Origin: Octopus sinensis | Lineage: Eukaryota | Reading direction: 5' to 3' | NCBI RefSeq assembly: GCF_006345805.1 | Contig: NC_042998.1 | Coordinates: forward strand, 77,500,001-77,564,000 | DNA length: 64,000 nucleotides | In this document: positions 12,775 through 57,447 of the stretch, piece by piece | Layout: each line of letters begins with the position of its first letter | How positions within the stretch are numbered: position 1 is the first letter of the stretch | Position numbers and translations under genes: made by a program | The notes under the pieces: model-generated | Seen by the model: the letters and a program-made list of their open reading frames with translations, nothing else | Databases searched by the model: none | Told to the model about the DNA's origin: nothing

Positions 12775-12805
<31 letters not shown>

Positions 12806-12826
12806 ATATATATATATATATGTATA

Positions 12827-13014
12827 GGGAAAGTTTACGAAAAAAACAAAAGACGAAGACAGGTGGTGTACAAAACAAACAGATGTAATAGTATAGCGCT
12901 CAGGAATAGAAAAGGTCTTTTACGTTTCGAGCCTACGCTCTTCTACAGAAAGGGAAACAGAAAAAAACAAGGAGAGAAAAAAATATGTGTAATGGCTAAC
13001 GATCTCTCTTGGCG
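12827..13014 (-). mobile_element. Hammerhead-bearing short repeat (Penelope pLTR-like terminus) in (TA)n
   Basis: Homologous by eye to 29578-29640, 49538-49880 and 55618-56210. Confidence 0.75.
12916..12952 (-). ncRNA. Minimal type-I hammerhead-like motif, variant core CUGUAGA
   Basis: CUUU-CUGUAGA-A-GAGC(GUAG)GCUC-GAAA-CG-U-A-AAAG: stems I and II pair; palindromic ACGU stem III. Confidence 0.65.
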
Positions 13015-18789: not shown

Positions 18790-19430
18790 TTTCAAAAGTG
18801 TTGCATGAAGGTTACCAGCATGTAGCGAAAAAATATCCTCATTTCAAACAGATATTTCCTCAGCCGCGTATTGTAGCCTTTAGACGGAATAAGAATATAA
18901 GAGAATTATTGGCCTCTATATCTGACTCCAAGAAAACGAACATTGGCGTATCTACACGCTGTACCTTAAAGAAAAGCCGCAAGAGAGGTAATCCCTGAAC
19001 ATTGTGTAACAACGTGAGTGAATTGAATTCCATCAGAAATCATAACAGAAATGTTATGATTTATACAGAAGGTGAAACATGTAAAGATTCCCACTTGGTG
19101 TACGCTGCAGAATGCTCGAAACACAAATTAATTTATGTTGGTTGCACAACAGAACAATTAAAGGAAAGGTTTCATGGGCGCAGATTCGACGTCAGGCACA
19201 ATAACAGTAGTTCGACAGAACTTGCTGAACATTTCGTTTCAAGCAGCTGCAATTTCGAAGAAGACTTGAAAGTGCATATTCTCAGAAAATATTCTGAATC
19301 TGCTTCACTTTCACTTCTTCAGAATGTATGAGGAGAAATATGTTTGCGGTTTATTAACATCACGCCCTGGCGGAATGAATAAGATGACAGGAGAATATTA
19401 TCAAATTTATAAAAAACTGTTTGACTAAAT
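18790..19430 (+). mobile_element. Penelope-like element fragment, GIY-YIG endonuclease
   Basis: FPQPRIVAFRRNKNIRELL; TCKDSHLVYAAECSKHKLIYVGCTTEQLKERF..R..ELAEHF; EEKYVC.L.T..PGGMN. Confidence 0.85.
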
Positions 19431-40902: not shown

Positions 40903-42885
40903 AAAGAAATATACGGACCTTCCACACATGGACAGGCTCCTCTGAAGAGTAAAGACGGAGCGACCATCCTGAAAAGCAACACCGAAATAGGAGACAGATG
41001 GAGAGAACACTTCGATGACCTCCTCAATCACAAGGCTACCATCGACAAAAGCATACTTGACATGATTCCTAAAGAGGCCAAAGATTACTCTCTCGCTCGA
41101 ATTCCATCCCTCGAAGAGGTCAAAATTGCTATCACAGCGATGAAGAACAACAAAGCCGCGGGTCCTGACGGAATCCCAGCTGAGATCTACAAACTGGGAG
41201 GTGATTTTGTCCAACACCAGCTCCACCAACTCTTGGTCAAAATCTGGACAAATGAAGTTGTACCATCCGACTTCAGGGATGCAAGCATCATTACCATTTA
41301 CAAACGAAAGGACGATCATTCTGAGTGTGGAAATTACAGGGTATTTCCTTATTAGCAACTGCTGGGAAGATTCTTACACGGATCCTGAACAACCGCCTCA
41401 AAACGCTGACAGAGAGGATCCTTCCTGAGACGCAGACCGGCTTTAGGCCATCACGAAGCACAACCGACATGATCCTCACGCTGCGACAGCTACAAGAAAA
41501 ATGTCGTGAGCAACACTAACCGCTCTATTTGGCCTTTACCGACCTATCCAAAGCCTTTGATCGTGTCTCACGAGAGCTCCTCTGGGATACTCTCGCCCAG
41601 TATGGATGCCCAGATAAGTTCATCCGGATCCTGAAACTCCTCCACGACAATATGCACGCCAGAGTCCAGACCGACGCAGGCAGTTCTGAGCCCTTTAAAG
41701 TCACCCTCGGAGTGAAGCAAGGCTGCGTGATAGCGCCAACTCTCTTTACCATCTTTATTGCGACAGTGTTGCACATCATACTAGATGACCTTCCACCTGG
41801 CATCGAGATCTCGTACAGAATGGACGGCAAGCTTTTCAACCTCGCTCCCCTCAAAAGTACGTCAAAGACAATGACGCGAAGCTTGCTAGTGTTCCAATAT
41901 GCCGACGACAACAGTGTAGCAGCTTACAGAGGGGATCACCTCCAACAGATCCTAAATGTCTTTCATCATGCATATACTAAACTTGGACTGAGCATCAACA
42001 TCAAGAAGACTCACTTACTCTACCAACCTCCTCCCAATGCCCGTGTTGACAACCCGCTATCGATTCAACTCGAAGGAATTCCTCTGGAAAATGTGAACCA
42101 TTTCTGCTACCTTGGGAGCCATCTGTCAGCAAAGGTAGACCTCAGCGATGAAATCCAACACCGTCTAAAGTGTGCAGGAACAGCTTTCGGCAAGCTTCGA
42201 ACAAGAGTTTTTGCTGATCTGGACATCCGAACCGAAACCAAACTCATGGTATACAGGGCAGTCATTATTCCAACCCTCCTTTACGCACCCGAAACCTGGA
42301 CCCCGTATAGTCACCACCTGAAAACGCTCGAGAAATTTCACCAACGCTGTCTTCTGAAGATCCTTAACATCAGCTGGGAAGACAGAAGAACTAACGTCAG
42401 CGTGCTACAAGAAGCAAAAATGACCAGCATCGAAGCCTATGTCATCAAAGGCCAACTAAGATGGAGCGGCCACGTGGTTAGAATGACTGACGAACGACTT
42501 CCCAAACAGATCTTCTACTCCCAACTCAAAGACGGCAAGCGTACAAAAGGAGGCCAGAAGAAACGCTACAAGGACTCCCTGAAAACGAACCTCAAAAAGT
42601 GTGACATCGATTTCACTAACTGGGAGGAAACGGCAAAAAACAGACCACTCTGGAAAACCACCATCCATGAGGGAACGGTGACTTTCGGGTCGAAAAGGTC
42701 TGCAGAGCTGGAGGAGAAAAGACGACGACGGAAGGAGCGCCAACAACAACCACGTGCGACTCTCCCTTCCGGCACTGGATGTGCGCACTGCGACCGATCT
42801 TTTCAAGCAAGAATTGGTCTTATCAGTCACCTACGGACTCACCAGTAAATTTGCGCGAAGACCATCATCCTCGACCTTGAGGGAT

Positions 42886-42893
<8 letters not shown>
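40903..42893 (+). mobile_element. 5'-truncated RTE (BovB-like) LINE, relatively young
   Basis: KAAGPDGIPAEIYKLGG; AFTDLSKAFDRVSRELLW; GVKQGCVIAPTLF; FQYADD; CAHCDRSFQARIGLISHLRTH; 3' stem-loop ATCCTC..GAGGGAT; 439-aa open stretch 41529-42848. Confidence 0.95.
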
Positions 42894-42943
<50 letters not shown>

Positions 42944-44839: not shown

Positions 44840-44887
44840 CTTGACTGAAGACCCTGTGCACACACAGGCGAAACTTAGAGTAGCAAG
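44840..44887 (+). ncRNA. Near-intact type-I hammerhead ribozyme motif
   Basis: CUUGA-CUGAAGA-CCCUGUG(CACA)CACAGGC-GAAA-CUUAGAG-UA-GCAAG; core intact; mismatches at 10.1:11.1 and 1.1:2.1. Confidence 0.75.
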
Positions 44888-46643: not shown

Positions 46644-46681
<38 letters not shown>

Positions 46682-46687
<6 letters not shown>

Positions 46688-48140
46688 CCTACATATAATA
46701 TGTATATAATTAAGAGACAAAACCTTTAGTAAGTAATTCAATTAATAGTGAAAGGTATTATCTATAATAAATCATATAGAAAGAATTTAGATATATTACA
46801 ATAAATATTATCCTAAAAATCACTAAATTAAATAAACATTAAATTGACTACGCGTGTTTCGTGACTATATATTTAAATCGATGATTTTAAAATCGATAAT
46901 ATTAAAAGTTAATTTTAAACGTTAAACTAAGAGATTAGCGTTGCTAAGAAATCTGTCACGTTAAAACATAACGTAAATAATAAATATAGGATAAATAAAT
47001 AGAAATCTGTATTTTAGGGGTGAAAATAAATAAACTTGACGTGATTTACCATTTACTGAGAAAAAGTCTAAATTCTCAATAATTTAAAACTAAAACTTTA
47101 TACGTAATATAATAAAATAAATTTCGATAAATTAATATATATTCATCAATTTATTTATTTATTTTATAAACACCTTGGTTTAATCTTATTCTAGGTTACA
47201 CTTCATAATCTACGGCTAAATTATACTCATTATACTATTACAAATTATAACTATAAATTTGTAACATAAATCAGGGTTTATATATATATACGCAAATTAG
47301 ATAAACTTATTACATAAGTAATTTAACCTATGTCTACAATTAATTTTTCTCTCATCTAGGTAATTAATGAATATTTTTATTATTAGATAGTAATATCTGT
47401 ATAAATTCATTTGTACATTGTAAACAAAAATTATTACCCATTCGATAAGACTTAACTTTACAAACTATCTCCAAATTTAAATTATACTTAATTCCTTTAG
47501 ATTTCAATTCCCATATATATTTGCTAAGGCCAGTAGAACTAATCAATGTTTTATTCTTAAATGAATGCATGTGTTGAGCCACCATTAATTTAATTTTATT
47601 AGAAGTCGAGCCCACATAAATCGCATTTAAATTATAACTATTCCTATTAATACTATCATCTCTCAGAGATATAAAGCATTTATATACTACATCATCCACA
47701 TTACATTTATGTTTAAATTTACATTTTGTCTTATCTATGCATGTAGAATTAATTATATTCTGCTCATTATTATTATTGGAATAATTATTTAATTTGTTAA
47801 TGTAAAATTTATTCAGCTTCAATTTATTAAAAGAAGAAATAATGTTACCAACAGTGTTAGTAGTAGAATAACCAACTCCAAAATTATTACTAGAAAACTT
47901 GTTATTATAATTTTAAATCGAATTAATATCAACTTTTAATATTATCGATTTAAATATATAGTCACGAAACGCGCGTAGTCAATTTAATGTTTATTTAATT
48001 TAGTGATTTTTAGAATAATATTTATTACGATATATTTAAATTCTTTCTATATGATTTATTATAGATAATATCTTTCACTATTAATTGAATTACATAATAG
48101 AGGTTTTGCTTCTTAATTATAGACATATATTAGATATTAT
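46682..48140 (-). mobile_element. Penelope-like element fragment (GIY-YIG) bracketed by an inverted copy of its own 3' terminal ~230 bp
   Basis: ORF 47364-47822 CNVDDVVYKC..IYVGSTSN..HMHSFKNK..TGLSKYIWELK..CLQC; arms about 46682-46911 and 47922-48140. Confidence 0.88.
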
Positions 48141-48238
48141 ATATTTATATATTTTGAAATATTAATTTAGTATTGCTTAATTGAACTTTTCCCTGTAAGT
48201 TTGGAATTTTATATTCCCTACTATTAATAACATATGTA

Positions 48239-48295
<57 letters not shown>

Positions 48296-48778
48296 ATATA
48301 TTATAGATAGAAAAGTAACACACGAGCCGATATGTATCAGGAAATTAAGAGAAGGTAGATAATGCTAAAATAGTTTTATCATGAAGAACATTATTTTAGG
48401 ATATGGGGGCAGTCAGAGGAGACATTTAACAGTATTAATAGTGAGGATGCAATGATGCTAATGAAAATTATACATATAATCTTATTCAGTTATTCACAAC
48501 CTATCCTCACTTCTTTTGTCCCAGTACGATTTAAATAAGACGGTGCTTTATTGTAGCTATGTGTTATTTGGACTCTTATTTCTAGCAGTACTGGAGCTGA
48601 AAAACGCCCTCAGTCACATTAGTGACGTATATATTTTGACCATTCCGTTGAAAAATTGCTATTTATAAGATTATATATATTATATATATATATATATTAT
48701 ATATATATATATATATATAAATAATAGAAATATTAAATTTCTAATATCTCAGAGATATAAGCAGAGGTGGAACGATAG

Positions 48779-49150
48779 AGCAGTTGTATACTGTCAACTT
48801 AACGTGACAGTCCCATAAAAGGAATCACACCGCCGCTATTTAACCCTTGGAGGCAACAACGCTTCCTGTCGGCTTTGACACATTTCCTGTGTCCTTGTGA
48901 TTACAAAGGGGAGACAAGCACCCCCAACAGCTAGGCAGCATCTACTCCAGACTGATGACGAGCAAGACTCAAAACATATCTCTGGGTGCAGGTCTAGCTG
49001 TTGGGGGGTGCTTGTCTCCCCTTTGTAAACATAAGGACACAGGAAATGTATCAAAGCCGACAGGTAGCGTTGATGCTTCCTAGGGCTAAATAGCGATGGT
49101 GCGATTCCCTTTATGGGACTGTCAGGTTAAGTTGACAGTATACAACTGCT
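48779..49150. mobile_element. Fold-back element: ~158-bp inverted arms with a hammerhead motif in the loop
   Basis: 48779-48936 versus 48992-49150, about 14 differences counted by eye (~91%). Confidence 0.9.
48946..48986 (+). ncRNA. Minimal hammerhead motif, probably inactivated (G12A)
   Basis: UCCAGA-CUGAUGA-C-GAG(CAAGA)CUC-AAAA-CAUA-UC-UCUGGG; AAAA and ACAUAU are each one G>A change from GAAA and palindromic ACAUGU. Confidence 0.7.
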
Positions 49151-49157
49151 ATTTCTC

Positions 49158-49198
<41 letters not shown>

Positions 49199-49316
49199 AT
49201 TATATATATATATTATCTATATATATATATATATATAATATACACACACTCACATGCACACACACACGCCTTCGTCTTTTGTCTATTTTCATAAAGCTTC
49301 CCGTTATATATATATA

Positions 49317-49367
<51 letters not shown>

Positions 49368-49368
49368 T

Positions 49369-49427
<59 letters not shown>

Positions 49428-49537
49428 TATATTATATTATATTATATTATATTAAATTAGAGATAAAACCACTATTAGGCAAATCAAACATTGAAAATCA
49501 TAACCCAATACATAGAAAAAAAAAATATATATATATA

Positions 49538-49880
49538 CAACGAACAGGTGCATTAGTTTAACGCTCGGGAAGGTGAGAGAGTCTTTTACGTTTCGAGCCT
49601 ACGCTATTCCACAGAAAGGAACACGAGAAATAAACACCGAGAGAATAAGAAAAAAAACTTTTGGAGCTAGCAGTCAATAATGGCGGCTGGCTGGACAAAG
49701 GTAGTTAGATAAGGGAGCTAGGAAGAAGGGGAGATTATAAAGTATTGGTGATCCGAAAACGAAGGGGCGCGGGCGTTAGTATGTGAGAGTGCGTGCCTGT
49801 GGATAGGGGCTGGTGTCTTTGATGTATGGATGTGTGCGTCTATAATGTGTGGGTGTGTGGATGATGGTGTGGGTGCTGGG
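49538..49880 (-). mobile_element. Hammerhead-bearing repeat (family of 12827 and 55618)
   Basis: Shared GTCTTTTACGTTTCGAGCCTACGCT..ACAGAAAG block; CA-rich upstream region on the minus strand. Confidence 0.7.
49582..49618 (-). ncRNA. Minimal hammerhead-like motif, variant core CUGUGGA
   Basis: CUUU-CUGUGGA-A-UAGC(GUAG)GCUC-GAAA-CG-U-A-AAAG; one stem II mismatch. Confidence 0.6.
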
Positions 49881-55561: not shown

Positions 55562-55617
<56 letters not shown>

Positions 55618-55618
<1 letters not shown>

Positions 55619-56210
55619 ACGGGAAGGTTTACGAAAATAAACAAAAGACGAAGGCAGGTGGAGTACAAACAAATGTATTAGTATGGCGCTCAGGAATAGA
55701 AATAGAACAAGTCTTTTACGTTTCGAGCCTACGCTCTTCGACAGAAAGATACACAGAAAAGAAACAAGGAGAGAAAAAAATGCGTGTAGGAGCTAACGGT
55801 CCATTATGGCGTACTGACTTCAGGCAGAAGTCAGAGGTTAGACGCTAGAGGGATAGTAGGGGAGATAACAGGGTCAAGTGACTTCGCCCCAACACGAAGG
55901 TCCGTGTGTGTATAAGAGAGTATGTATGTGCGTGTGAAAGAGGGCTGGTGGTCTGGACGTGTGTATGTATGTGTGAGTGTGGAGATATGGGGATGGGTGA
56001 GTGAGTGGTGTGTTGTGATATGATATGTGTATGTATGTGTAGGTGTAAAGATGTGGGGATGGGTGTGTGGGCAGTGTGCTGTGGGTGGTGTGTTGTGATG
56101 TGATGTGTAATGTCGTATGGTTTAGTGTAGTGTGGTGTGATGTTGTGGGGAGGGGGTGCGAGAGTGGGGAAAGCCCATATGGGGTGTGGGTTCGGCTGGG
56201 GGTTGGGGTG
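55618..56210 (-). mobile_element. Hammerhead-bearing repeat with CA-rich upstream region, both ends in (TA)n
   Basis: Longest copy of the family; terminus ..GTAAACCTTCCCGTT then TATATA. Confidence 0.75.
55712..55749 (-). ncRNA. Minimal hammerhead-like motif, variant core CUGUCGA
   Basis: UCUUU-CUGUCGA-A-GAGC(GUAG)GCUC-GAAA-CG-U-A-AAAGA; 5-bp stem I and 4-bp stem II perfect. Confidence 0.7.
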
Positions 56211-56636
56211 TATATATATATATACAGTCAAAAATTGTGAAGCATGACTGTCAACACTACTACATGAACCCGAAGATTGCAGAATTCAATGCATGAAAGT
56301 ACTAGTTCAATCAGAATGAATATTTAACATTCTACTATTTCATTTTATTTTATTCAATTATAATATATTATCTTATAATATATCATTATAAGATTGTAAA
56401 TAAAACGTGAAAATCAGACAGGTTGGAATTCTTTTTATAATATATATATATATATATAATATATATATATATATACCAATTAAGGACTGAACACGAAAAG
56501 GTGGACAGTCAACATGCTAGATATAGACGTCAAATCGCCATTCTCCACAAGGATTATGTTCTCAAATAAAAATAAAATTCAGCACGACCTAAAGCAATGG
56601 ATGAGACAAAAGAAATATACTAAATGGAATAATTAC

Positions 56637-56696
56637 CTACGTACTGCAGTTTCAGCTATTAATATCACAAGGATATCTGTAGCTTCATCAGCGTAG
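56637..56696 (-). ncRNA. Intact type-I hammerhead ribozyme (minus-strand copy)
   Basis: Reverse complement of 57058-57117. Confidence 0.88.
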
Positions 56697-57057
56697 TTTG
56701 TTATGAGCATAATATGCTGTACTAGATGAAAAACGGTACCGGAGTCCCGCATGCAAAAAGTACAACCTATTACGTTCGGATGTATCTTTCGAATGCCTCT
56801 ACTTTTGGCGCGCTGATAATCTGGTTTTAATTGACTAATATCAATTTCTACCCTTAATTTTTAAATATGAAATATATGTTCTCAAACCGATAAATTGACT
56901 GCTGCTAATTATTGGCTGCAGGCTAGTTTTTCGATTATCAGCGCGCCAAAAGTAGAGGCATTCGAAAGATACATCCGAACGTAATAGGTTGTACTTTTTG
57001 CATGCGGGACTCCGGTACCGTTTTTCATCTAGTACAGCATATTATGCTCATAACAAA

Positions 57058-57117
57058 CTACGCTGATGAAGCTACAGATATCCTTGTGATATTAATAGCT
57101 GAAACTGCAGTACGTAG
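57058..57117 (+). ncRNA. Intact type-I hammerhead ribozyme
   Basis: CUACG-CUGAUGA-AGCUA(ca GAUAUC cuugu GAUAUU aa)UAGCU-GAAA-CUGCAG-UA-CGUAG: all core positions canonical, stems I and II perfect, stem III palindromic ACUGCAGU. Confidence 0.88.
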
Positions 57118-57447
57118 GTAATTATTCCATTTAGTATATTTCTTTTGTCTCATCCATTGCTTTAGGTCGTGCTGAATTTTATTTTTATTTGAGAACATAA
57201 TCCTTGTGGAGAATGGCGATTTGACGTCTATATCTAGCATGTTGACTGTCCACCTTTTCGTGTTCAGTCCTTAATTGGTATATATAAATATTTTAATCTT
57301 CGGATTCTTTTTAATGTGCTAGACCACTGGTTTTAATTGACTAATATCAATTTCTACCCTTAATTTTTAAATATATATATATATATATATATGAAAAATG
57401 TATGGTAAATAACATACCATACGATATAGCACATACTGAGTGTAAAA

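What the first reader, a model, noticed from the sequence alone, without database searches (positions are those of the whole stretch)
48779..49150. 372-bp rod-like fold-back element with a hammerhead exactly at the apex
Seen: ~158-bp arms about 91% identical, so old enough not to be an artefact. Most of the 55-nt loop is a minimal hammerhead (stem I CCAGA/UCUGG, CUGAUGA, short stem II, UC site) with two G>A changes, one at a CpG. There is no ORF. Inference: the transcript would be a viroid-like rod that self-cleaves at its tip. It could be a retrozyme-like or hairpin-primed non-autonomous element, or a MITE that captured a ribozyme. I do not recognise this architecture as a named class.
Basis: partly seen in the sequence, partly recalled or inferred. 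Interest (0 to 1): 0.85.

Follow-up and report, generated by a model that had tools for sequence, protein, structure and literature searches.

The report
Decayed Penelope-type hammerhead inverted-repeat remnant
The fold-back and its hammerhead-like tip are real, but they are most likely the dead remains of an ordinary Penelope-like retrotransposon insertion, a kind that routinely lands as two head-to-head truncated copies, and not a new class of self-cleaving rod-shaped element.

Summary
Positions 48779-49150 form a 372-nt fold-back with 157-nt arms that are 91% identical and a 58-nt loop. In the loop, 48947-48985 is a type-I hammerhead motif that is not chance: a generic descriptor gave one hit in the window and none in 200 simulated windows. 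The motif has the features published for Penelope-like-element (PLE) minimal hammerheads. The core is broken, with G12>A and a spoiled helix-III palindrome. This hammerhead type needs a second copy to cleave.

The architecture is not new. The repaired motif retrieved at least 120 metagenome loci carrying the same hammerhead, some beside RT/GIY-YIG ORFs. Of 86 distinct loci, 62 have an inverted truncated copy just upstream. In 7 of these the hammerhead sits alone in the loop, as here. The same window holds a younger fold-back (56463-57291) with an intact hammerhead in each arm, and further hammerhead-bearing fragments at (TA)n repeats.

Best reading: two 5'-truncated copies of a PLE-type 3' end joined head-to-head, with only the longer one reaching the hammerhead, then neutral decay.

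Not shown: arm homology to a named PLE, and genome copy number. The arms found nothing in any collection available.

Interest is low.

The parts
48779..48935 (-). Left arm. I read it as an inverted, 5'-truncated copy of the element's 3' tail that stops 8 nt short of the hammerhead.
   Evidence: 91% identical to the reverse complement of 48994-49150. Its outer end coincides with that of the right arm. This is expected if both outer ends are the element's 3' terminus.
48936..48993 (+). 58-nt loop: 11 nt, then the hammerhead, then 8 nt. It is the extra 5' part of the longer (+) copy.
   Evidence: Sequence; fold.
48947..48985 (+). Degenerate type-I minimal hammerhead. Stem I is 48947-51 with 48981-85. 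CUGAUGA is 48952-58. The extra nucleotide C is 48959. Stem II is 48960-62 with 48968-70. G12>A is at 48971. A13 to A15.1 are 48972-74. The helix-III palindrome remnant is 48974-79, with G16.2>A at 48978. C17 is 48980.
   Evidence: It is the only hit of a generic descriptor, with 0 hits in 200 simulations. It scores 19.6 bits, E 1.5e-3, as the second-best hit of a covariance model built from 40 unrelated PLE-type hammerheads. Its features match PMC4209133.
48994..49150 (+). Right arm: the 3' tail of the longer, sense copy. The hammerhead lies 165 nt from the outer end.
   Evidence: The layout parallels the intact fold-back at 56463-57291, where the hammerhead lies about 161 nt from the outer end.
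48672..48723 (.). (TA)n microsatellite 55 nt left of the element; the likely target context.
   Evidence: PLEs show an insertion bias for microsatellites, with (TA)n marked as a preferred target (PMC8557442).
49155..49240 (.). (CT)n then (TA)n, starting 4 nt beyond the right arm.
   Evidence: The purine-rich left flank (48751-48778) is only about 50% complementary to it, so extension of the arms into the flanks is not established.

Best explanation
This is a dead relic of one insertion of a hammerhead-bearing Penelope-like retroelement, or of a short RNA mobilised by one, into a microsatellite-rich spot.

Proposed history (inferred):
1. The element's RNA carried a minimal type-I hammerhead about 165 nt upstream of its 3' end.
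2. As is usual for this class, the insertion was heavily 5'-truncated and came as two copies joined head-to-head.
3. The + strand copy (48936-49150) keeps 11 nt, the hammerhead and the 3' tail.
4. The inverted copy (48779-48935) is cut 8 nt downstream of the hammerhead.
5. The two tails therefore form 157-nt arms, and the hammerhead is left alone in the loop as a by-product of unequal truncation, not by design.
6. Both arms and the ribozyme then decayed neutrally. The arms now differ by about 9%, and the ribozyme carries G12>A and G16.2>A.

Today it cannot self-cleave and has no evident function. If transcribed it would simply be a long hairpin RNA.

Shown here: the anatomy, the hammerhead type, the neutral pattern of arm differences, and that this layout is common for this hammerhead class, including in this same window.

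Inferred: the PLE parentage of the arms, the single-event origin of both arms, and the orientation.
For: 1. The hammerhead is real and of the PLE type.
- It is the unique descriptor hit.

2. The repaired motif is a natural family.
- It found at least 120 metagenome loci.
- Stem I was not imposed by the search pattern, yet it pairs and covaries: 16 cells changed on both sides against 5.4 expected, reached by 0 of 500 shuffles.
- Some loci have ORFs beside the hammerhead with YVDD and GIY-YIG motifs.

3. Inverted partners are the norm in that family.
- 62 of 86 distinct loci have one within 700 nt, at many different spacings. 44 partners hold the whole hammerhead, 11 are cut inside it and 7 lack it. 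In those 7 the single hammerhead sits in the loop. L088 folds the same way as this element.

4. The same window holds parallel cases.
- Fold-back 56463-57291 has 359-nt identical arms, each with an intact hammerhead about 161 nt from an outer end that abuts (TA)n.
- A second hammerhead-like family has 3' ends at (TA)n, and two of its fragments lie within 500 nt of this element.
- A GIY-YIG-like remnant lies at 19.1 kb.

5. The arm differences show no wobble bias: 3 G:U against 5 A:C on the + strand, plus 5 transversions. This fits decay of a once-perfect DNA duplication.

6. The outer ends of the two arms coincide. This is expected if both are the element's 3' terminus.

7. Published descriptions of PLE inverted 5'-truncated copies and microsatellite bias are in PMC8557442.
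Against: - No homology of the arms to any PLE was shown. The arms found nothing in the window, metagenome, prokaryote-genome or viral collections, and no eukaryotic repeat library was available.
- The window holds no intact PLE ORF, by tblastn with two metagenome PLE ORFs.
- The longer copy stops only 11 nt upstream of the hammerhead, which centres the ribozyme neatly in the loop. In the seven analogous metagenome cases the upstream spacer is 43-527 nt, so this tidiness is somewhat unusual.
- Rfam hammerhead models do not hit the motif. They also miss the intact hammerheads of this type, so this says little.
- The comparison family was fetched with a pattern derived from this motif, so the covariance-model E-value is partly circular.
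Confidence: 0.7

Rival explanations
1. A dedicated hairpin-shaped non-autonomous element. The family consensus would itself be a rod with the hammerhead at the apex. One version is a linear DNA copy of a rod-like, retrozyme-type circular RNA opened at the loop opposite the ribozyme and mobilised by PLE enzymes.
For: - The hammerhead is almost exactly centred in the loop, with 11 nt and 8 nt spacers.
- The size of 372 nt falls in the 170-400 nt range of animal retrozyme monomers (PMC7229834 abstract).
- Solo monomers are common.
- Both arm ends coincide.
Against: - It is single-copy in the window, and no relative was found in any collection.
- The arms are near-perfect complements, and their mismatches show no G:U bias. 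Evolved RNA rods are imperfect.
- The same layout arises at varied spacings as a truncation variant in an unrelated family.
- One hammerhead cannot excise a unit.
Confidence: 0.1
2. A solo 5'-truncated hammerhead-bearing retroelement end that was later turned into a palindrome by a DNA-level event, such as a replication template switch or hairpin repair, unrelated to the insertion mechanism.
For: - The inner arm boundary lies in the palindromic AGCTAG/CTAGCT sequence, which could serve as microhomology.
- The flanks are microsatellites prone to replication errors.
Against: - The high frequency of inverted partners for this hammerhead class (62 of 86 loci) and in this window points to the insertion process itself.
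- A later event would not be expected to end exactly at the element's outer boundary on both sides.
Confidence: 0.1
3. A MITE or fold-back DNA transposon with 157-bp terminal inverted repeats that happened to capture a ribozyme in its middle.
For: Long inverted ends and no coding capacity.
Against: - No direct repeat of 7 nt or more occurs in the flanks; the only flank-adjacent 6-mer has its other copy 42 nt from the left arm.
- There is no second copy in 64 kb.
- The middle consists of little except the hammerhead.
- The hammerhead type is the one tied to PLEs (PMC4209133).
Confidence: 0.05
4. Chance resemblance or assembly artefact.
For: Rfam gives no hammerhead hit.
Against: - The fold z-score is -28.
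- The descriptor gives 0 hits in 200 simulations.
- 9% arm divergence is not what a chimeric-read palindrome looks like.
- Rfam also misses intact hammerheads of this type.
Confidence: 0.02

Closest known systems
Minimal type-I hammerheads of Penelope-like element terminal repeats (Cervera & de la Pena 2014, PMC4209133; Lunse, Weinberg & Breaker 2017, as summarised in PMC6765202)
   Same: - Type-I topology with a short stem I.
- CUGAUGA box and an extra nucleotide before stem II.
- G10.1-C11.1 pair.
- Tiny palindromic helix III (ACAUGU type).
- Mostly found as scattered single motifs from truncated elements, sometimes as pairs on opposite strands 100-700 bp apart.
   Different: - This copy has A instead of G12 and a broken palindrome.
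- Stem II is only 3 bp, whereas most published PLE examples have 6-8 bp.
- No adjacent PLE ORF.
Complex tandem/inverted insertions of Penelope-like elements (Evgen'ev & Arkhipova 2005; Craig et al. 2021, PMC8557442)
   Same: - Severe 5' truncation.
- An inverted 5'-truncated copy placed head-to-head so that inverted repeats flank the unit.
- Microsatellite target context.
   Different: - Here both copies are tiny (157 and 215 nt), so the whole insertion is just a hairpin.
- Parentage of the arms is unproven.
- No 30-40 bp 'tail' was identified.
Animal non-LTR retrozymes (Cervera & de la Pena 2020, PMC7229834; Li et al. 2026 preprint, 10.64898/2026.07.22.740005)
   Same: - Non-coding and a few hundred nt long.
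- Type-I hammerhead.
- Related to PLE terminal repeats; solo monomers exist.
   Different: - Retrozymes are defined by tandem units with one hammerhead per unit that release circular RNA.
- Here there is one hammerhead, no tandem repeat, and a DNA-level inverted duplication.
Fold-back at 56463-57291 in this same window
   Same: - Head-to-head inverted copies of a hammerhead-bearing 3' end.
- Hammerhead about 160 nt from the outer ends.
- (TA)n at the ends.
   Different: - Arms are 359 nt and identical, so it is young.
- Both copies reach past the hammerhead, so there are two intact ribozymes, one per strand.
- The sequence family is unrelated.
Avsunviroidae and viroid-like satellite RNAs
   Same: Highly self-complementary RNA carrying a hammerhead.
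   Different: - Those are replicating circular RNAs with imperfect rods and hammerheads of both polarities embedded in the rod.
- This is a genomic DNA palindrome with a dead ribozyme in its loop.

Membership tests
Hammerhead ribozyme, type I, PLE 'min-HHR' variety | 5' core box C3-U4-G5-A6-N7-G8-A9 | tested here: met
   CUGAUGA at 48952-48958.
Hammerhead ribozyme, type I, PLE 'min-HHR' variety | 3' core G12-A13-A14 followed by A15.1 | tested here: not met
   AAAA at 48971-48974. G12 is replaced by A at a former CpG. From established hammerhead biochemistry, G12 is the general base, so this copy should be inactive.
Hammerhead ribozyme, type I, PLE 'min-HHR' variety | [quoted passage not shown] | tested here: met
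   CCAGA/UCUGG, UC at 48979-80, GAG/CUC and C48959. It is the unique hit of a descriptor requiring these features, with 0 hits in 200 simulations.
Hammerhead ribozyme, type I, PLE 'min-HHR' variety | Palindromic positions 15.2-16.2 / loop 3, allowing a dimeric helix III | tested here: not met
   ACAUAU is one G>A change from the palindrome ACAUGU. The ACAUGU form is the one present in at least 120 natural loci.
Hammerhead ribozyme, type I, PLE 'min-HHR' variety | Match to a curated or independent covariance model | tested here: inconclusive
   Rfam gives no hit at E<=10, but Rfam also misses intact examples. My own model, built from 40 metagenome hammerheads, gives 19.6 bits, E 1.5e-3. That family was retrieved with a pattern derived from this motif.
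Hammerhead ribozyme, type I, PLE 'min-HHR' variety | Self-cleavage | not testable with these tools
   Needs an in vitro transcription assay.
Penelope-like element insertion (truncated remnant) | Sequence homology of the non-ribozyme part to a PLE 3' end or pLTR | not testable with these tools
   No eukaryotic repeat library or source genome was available. The arms gave 0 hits in the window, metagenome, prokaryote-genome and viral collections.
Penelope-like element insertion (truncated remnant) | RT plus GIY-YIG ORF | tested here: not met
   The element has no ORF. tblastn with two metagenome PLE ORFs found nothing significant in the window. This is expected for a 5'-truncated remnant, so it does not exclude derivation.
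Penelope-like element insertion (truncated remnant) | Inverted 5'-truncated copy adjacent head-to-head, forming inverted repeats | tested here: met
   Arms. The same arrangement occurs in 62 of 86 loci of an unrelated PLE-type hammerhead family and at 56463-57291.
Penelope-like element insertion (truncated remnant) | Insertion in or next to microsatellites | tested here: inconclusive
   (TA)n and (CT)n lie within 55 nt on both sides. The whole window is microsatellite-rich, so this is weak evidence.
Animal non-LTR retrozyme | Tandem head-to-tail units, each with a hammerhead | tested here: not met
   There is one hammerhead, and no tandem array other than microsatellites.
Animal non-LTR retrozyme | Circular RNA product | not testable with these tools
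   Needs RNA data.
MITE / fold-back DNA transposon | Target-site duplication flanking the terminal inverted repeats | tested here: not met
   No direct repeat of 7 nt or more was found in the ~55-65 nt flanks searched on each side.
MITE / fold-back DNA transposon | Many dispersed copies | tested here: inconclusive
   Single copy in 64 kb and absent from a 21.6-kb Octopus sinensis locus. The genome-wide count could not be tested.

The most novel reading that the evidence does not exclude
The element is one member of an undescribed family of hairpin-shaped, PLE-mobilised non-autonomous retroelements. In such a family the hammerhead would be placed at the tip of a long double-stranded rod by design. 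One possibility is a DNA copy of a rod-like ribozyme-bearing circular RNA opened at the opposite loop. Two transcripts could then pair through the ACAUGU palindrome at their tips to form the active dimeric ribozyme.
Probability: 0.08. Interest if true: 0.6.

Novelty: new member of a known kind. Interest (0 to 1): 0.2.

Why it matters
It matters little as a discovery. It adds one decayed example to the thousands of truncated hammerhead-bearing PLE ends already known in animal genomes.

Its use is mainly cautionary. A hammerhead sitting neatly at the tip of a long hairpin looks designed. It falls out naturally when PLE-type insertions arrive as head-to-head copies truncated at different points.

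The window as a whole is a compact illustration of this in what appears to be an octopus genome. It holds three hammerhead-like families, several head-to-head structures and (TA)n-associated ends.

If the minority reading were true, it would link PLE integration to hairpin or circular RNA templates. That would bear on the unresolved PLE transposition mechanism.

Tried and rejected
1. Rfam, whole window at gathering threshold and 48700-49250 at E<=10, gave no hammerhead. I rejected this as evidence after showing that Rfam also misses intact hammerheads of this type.

2. I translated the longest stop-free frame across the loop (96 aa) to fish for spurious ORF calls on sister copies. No candidates were found.

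3. Exact look-up of two window ORFs in the assembly index found neither on record.

4. Arm patterns were scanned in metagenome, prokaryote-genome and viral collections, with 0 hits each.

5. tblastn of two metagenome PLE ORFs against the window gave nothing significant. It did draw attention to a GIY-YIG-like remnant at 19.1 kb.

6. The arms were aligned with the window's second hammerhead family. The scores were no better than shuffles.

7. The target-site duplication search found none.

8. I tested whether the arms extend into the (AG)/(CT) flanks. Complementarity is only about 50%, so this is not established.

9. I asked whether the inverted copies begin at the ribozyme cleavage site, which would imply a self-cleaved RNA template. 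They do not, neither here (13 nt downstream) nor in the metagenome set.

10. The hammerhead-like hit at 44845-44882 has no Rfam or model support and is left as a weak candidate.

11. Homologues of the 152-aa ORF in the AT-rich neighbour were sought and none found.

Full report
**1.

Reading 48500-49450 and the repeat finder show an inverted repeat centred near 48965.
- A gapped alignment gives arms 48779-48935 and 48994-49150, 157 nt each. They differ by 13 substitutions and one indel in a C-run, about 91% identity.
- As RNA the 372 nt fold into one rod of -280.8 kcal/mol, against -106 +/- 6 for shuffles, z = -28.
- The 58-nt loop contains, at 48947-48985 on the + strand, CCAGA-CUGAUGA-C-GAG(CAAGA)CUC-AAAA-CAUAU-C-UCUGG.
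- This is a type-I hammerhead layout with a 5-bp stem I, an intact 5' box, a 3-bp stem II and a UC cleavage site.
- It has A in place of G12 (48971, a CpG>CpA change) and ACAUAU where ACAUGU would be palindromic (48978).
- No real ORF exists.

**2. The hammerhead-like motif is not chance**

A generic minimal-hammerhead descriptor was used. It requires:
- CUGANGA;
- 0-1 extra nucleotide;
- a stem II of at least 3 bp closed by G-C;
- GAAA with at most one mismatch;
- U-H;
- a flush 5-bp stem I.

It hits only this site in both strands of the window. It hit nothing in 200 simulated 64-kb sequences.

Rfam gives no hammerhead hit. Rfam also fails on intact hammerheads of the same type in metagenome loci and at 57058-57117, so that negative result carries no weight.

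**3. What kind of hammerhead it is**

Cervera & de la Pena (PMC4209133) describe the minimal hammerheads of Penelope-like elements (PLEs). Their features are a short helix I, a nucleotide inserted between positions 9 and 10.1, a conserved G10.1-C11.1 pair, and a tiny palindromic helix III.
- Because of that helix III, the ribozyme is expected to work only as a dimer of two copies.
- Activity in vitro is low even then (also PMC6765202).
- The loop motif shows each of these traits, counting the palindrome as one change away.
- They also report that most such motifs are single, from truncated PLEs, and that pairs occur 100-700 bp apart on opposite strands.

**4. Relatives from elsewhere**

The arms found nothing anywhere.
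- From memory, and not verified with tools, the project codes are termite-gut sets, so the contigs would be host insect DNA.
- All contigs show a stem I that the pattern did not impose. It covaries: 16 cells changed on both sides against 5.4 expected, reached by 0 of 500 shuffles.
- Several contigs have ORFs beside the hammerhead with YVDD and GIY-YIG motifs. Pfam gives RVT_1 at 1.3e-6 and GIY-YIG at 1.7e-3, both below the curated cut-offs.

These are PLE terminal hammerheads of an unrelated family. Their layout is as follows:
- Of 108 sites, or 86 distinct loci, 62 have an inverted copy of the 'hammerhead + 3' tail' within 700 nt upstream.
- The spacings differ from locus to locus (35 distinct values among the 44 whole-hammerhead cases), so these are independent events.
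- In 44 loci the inverted copy includes the whole hammerhead. In 11 it is cut inside the hammerhead. In 7 it stops downstream of it, which leaves a single hammerhead in the loop between two arms.
- L088:270-520 folds into exactly such a rod with an intact hammerhead in the apical loop.

A covariance model built from 40 of these hammerheads scores the window's loop at 19.6 bits, E 1.5e-3. It is the second-best hit in the window. This is partly circular, because the family was fetched with a pattern taken from the motif.

**5. The same window supplies its own parallels**

(a) Positions 56463-57291 form a fold-back with 359-nt arms that are 100% identical and a 111-nt loop.
- Each arm holds an intact type-I hammerhead, at 57058-57117 on + and mirrored at 56637-56696 on -.
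- Its sequence is CUACG-CUGAUGA-AGCUA...UAGCU-GAAA-C-UGCA-G-UA-CGUAG.
- The hammerhead lies about 161 nt from outer ends that abut (TA)n.
- In the element under study the hammerhead lies 165 nt from the outer end.

(b) A second family has a hammerhead-like motif and about 95 nt of tail ending in (TA)n.
- Copies lie at about 55.7 kb and 12.9 kb, about 85% identical over 224-239 aligned nt.
- Fragments at 49268-49323 and 49580-49645 abut the (TA)n at 49305-49452 from both sides, within 500 nt of the element.

(c) An AT-rich unit at 46657-48169 has 236-nt inverted arms around 1 kb that holds a 152-aa ORF.

(d) A GIY-YIG-like reading frame survives at about 19.1 kb.

**6. Best explanation**

The element is two 5'-truncated copies of the 3' end of a hammerhead-bearing PLE-type retroelement, joined head-to-head.
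- The + copy (48936-49150) reaches 11 nt past the hammerhead.
- The inverted copy (48779-48935) stops 8 nt short of it.

This accounts for the following:
- The outer ends of the arms coincide, because both are the element's 3' terminus.
- There is only one hammerhead, and it sits in the loop.
- The context is microsatellite-rich.

The arm mismatches are 8 transitions and 5 transversions. On the + strand, 3 are G:U and 5 are A:C. This shows no sign of selection for RNA pairing and fits neutral decay of a once-perfect duplication. The two changes in the 39-nt hammerhead (5%) match the roughly 4.5% per-arm divergence.

How PLEs make such inverted copies is unresolved in the literature. PMC8557442 attributes it to the endonuclease's way of resolving the intermediate. 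Snap-back self-priming of the cDNA would give the same product.

**7. What it does now**

It most likely does nothing.
- G12 is the general base in the established hammerhead mechanism, so the A at 48971 should abolish cleavage.
- The ancestral form would also have needed a partner copy to build helix III.
- One cleavage site cannot release a unit or a circle.
- If transcribed, the 157-bp stem would be an ordinary long hairpin RNA and a possible Dicer substrate. This is an inference and was not tested.

**8. What remains unproven**

I could not show that the arms belong to a named PLE. I could not count copies in the source genome.
- The window's LINE at 40905-42894 is 96-97% identical to Octopus sinensis chromosome CM016862.1, so the window is probably from that genus. 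No octopus genome could be searched by DNA.
- The tidy centring of the hammerhead (11 and 8 nt spacers) is tighter than in the seven metagenome analogues.
- This keeps alive, at low probability, a reading in which the hairpin with an apical hammerhead is itself the unit of a family.

**9. Verdict**

The structure is real and the ribozyme relic is real. The interpretation as a new self-cleaving rod-like class is not supported. It is a new, dead member of a known kind.

Noticed in passing
window 56463-57291: A young fold-back with 359-nt arms that are 100% identical and a 111-nt loop. Each arm carries an intact type-I hammerhead (57058-57117 on +, mirror 56637-56696 on -) with a palindromic helix III (ACUGCAGU). 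The outer ends abut (TA)n. The first 47 nt of the loop (56822-56868) recur at 57329-57376, beyond the right arm. Because the arms are identical, an assembly artefact should be excluded.
   Followed up: partly
window 55612-55850 (-), 12789-13001 (-), 49580-49645 (-), 49268-49323 (+); L121 12315-12367: A multi-copy family with a hammerhead-like motif, UCUUU-CUGUNGA-A-GAGC-GUAG-GCUC-GAAAC-GUA-AAAGA. U replaces the normally invariant A6 in all four copies, including one in Octopus sinensis. Position 7 is free (C, A, G or U), as in true hammerheads. A tail of about 95 nt ends in (TA)n. It could be an unusual core variant or a ribozyme-derived motif kept for another reason.
   Followed up: partly
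window 46657-48169: A very AT-rich unit with 236-nt inverted arms (86% complementary) around 1041 nt. The middle contains a 152-aa ORF (47364-47822, - strand) with GIY-YIG-like spacing (VVYKC...IYVGST...H...E). (TA)n lies on both sides. No Pfam hit and no homologue in the 5.8-billion-protein collection. It may be another head-to-head truncated PLE.
   Followed up: partly
window 19098-19260 (+): A reading frame with a clearer GIY-YIG signature (LVYAAEC...LIYVGCTTEQLKERFHGRR...LAEHF). It is probably a PLE endonuclease remnant. tblastn to a metagenome PLE ORF gave only E = 1.2.
   Followed up: no
window 44845-44882 (+): A hammerhead-like string, CUGAAGA-C-CCUGUG-CACA-CACAGG-C-GAAAC-UUAGA-GUA, with a 4-bp stem I. 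It has no Rfam or model support and the pattern count is within chance, so it is a weak candidate.
   Followed up: partly
window 40905-42894; L121 9437-11392: This LINE copy is 96-97% identical at the DNA level to Octopus sinensis chromosome CM016862.1. The window therefore probably comes from Octopus or a very close relative. The window is dense in LINE reverse-transcriptase fragments and in (TA)n, (CT)n, (CA)n and trinucleotide repeats.
   Followed up: partly
metagenome loci L001-L120: A large hammerhead family, CCUC-CUGAUGA-U-GAGCAC..GUGCUC-GAAACAUGU-A-GAGG, followed by about 65 nt with AAUAAA. 72% of distinct loci carry an inverted truncated partner within 700 nt, and most contigs lack long ORFs. 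The inverted arrangement is far more frequent than a tandem one in this sample.
   Followed up: partly
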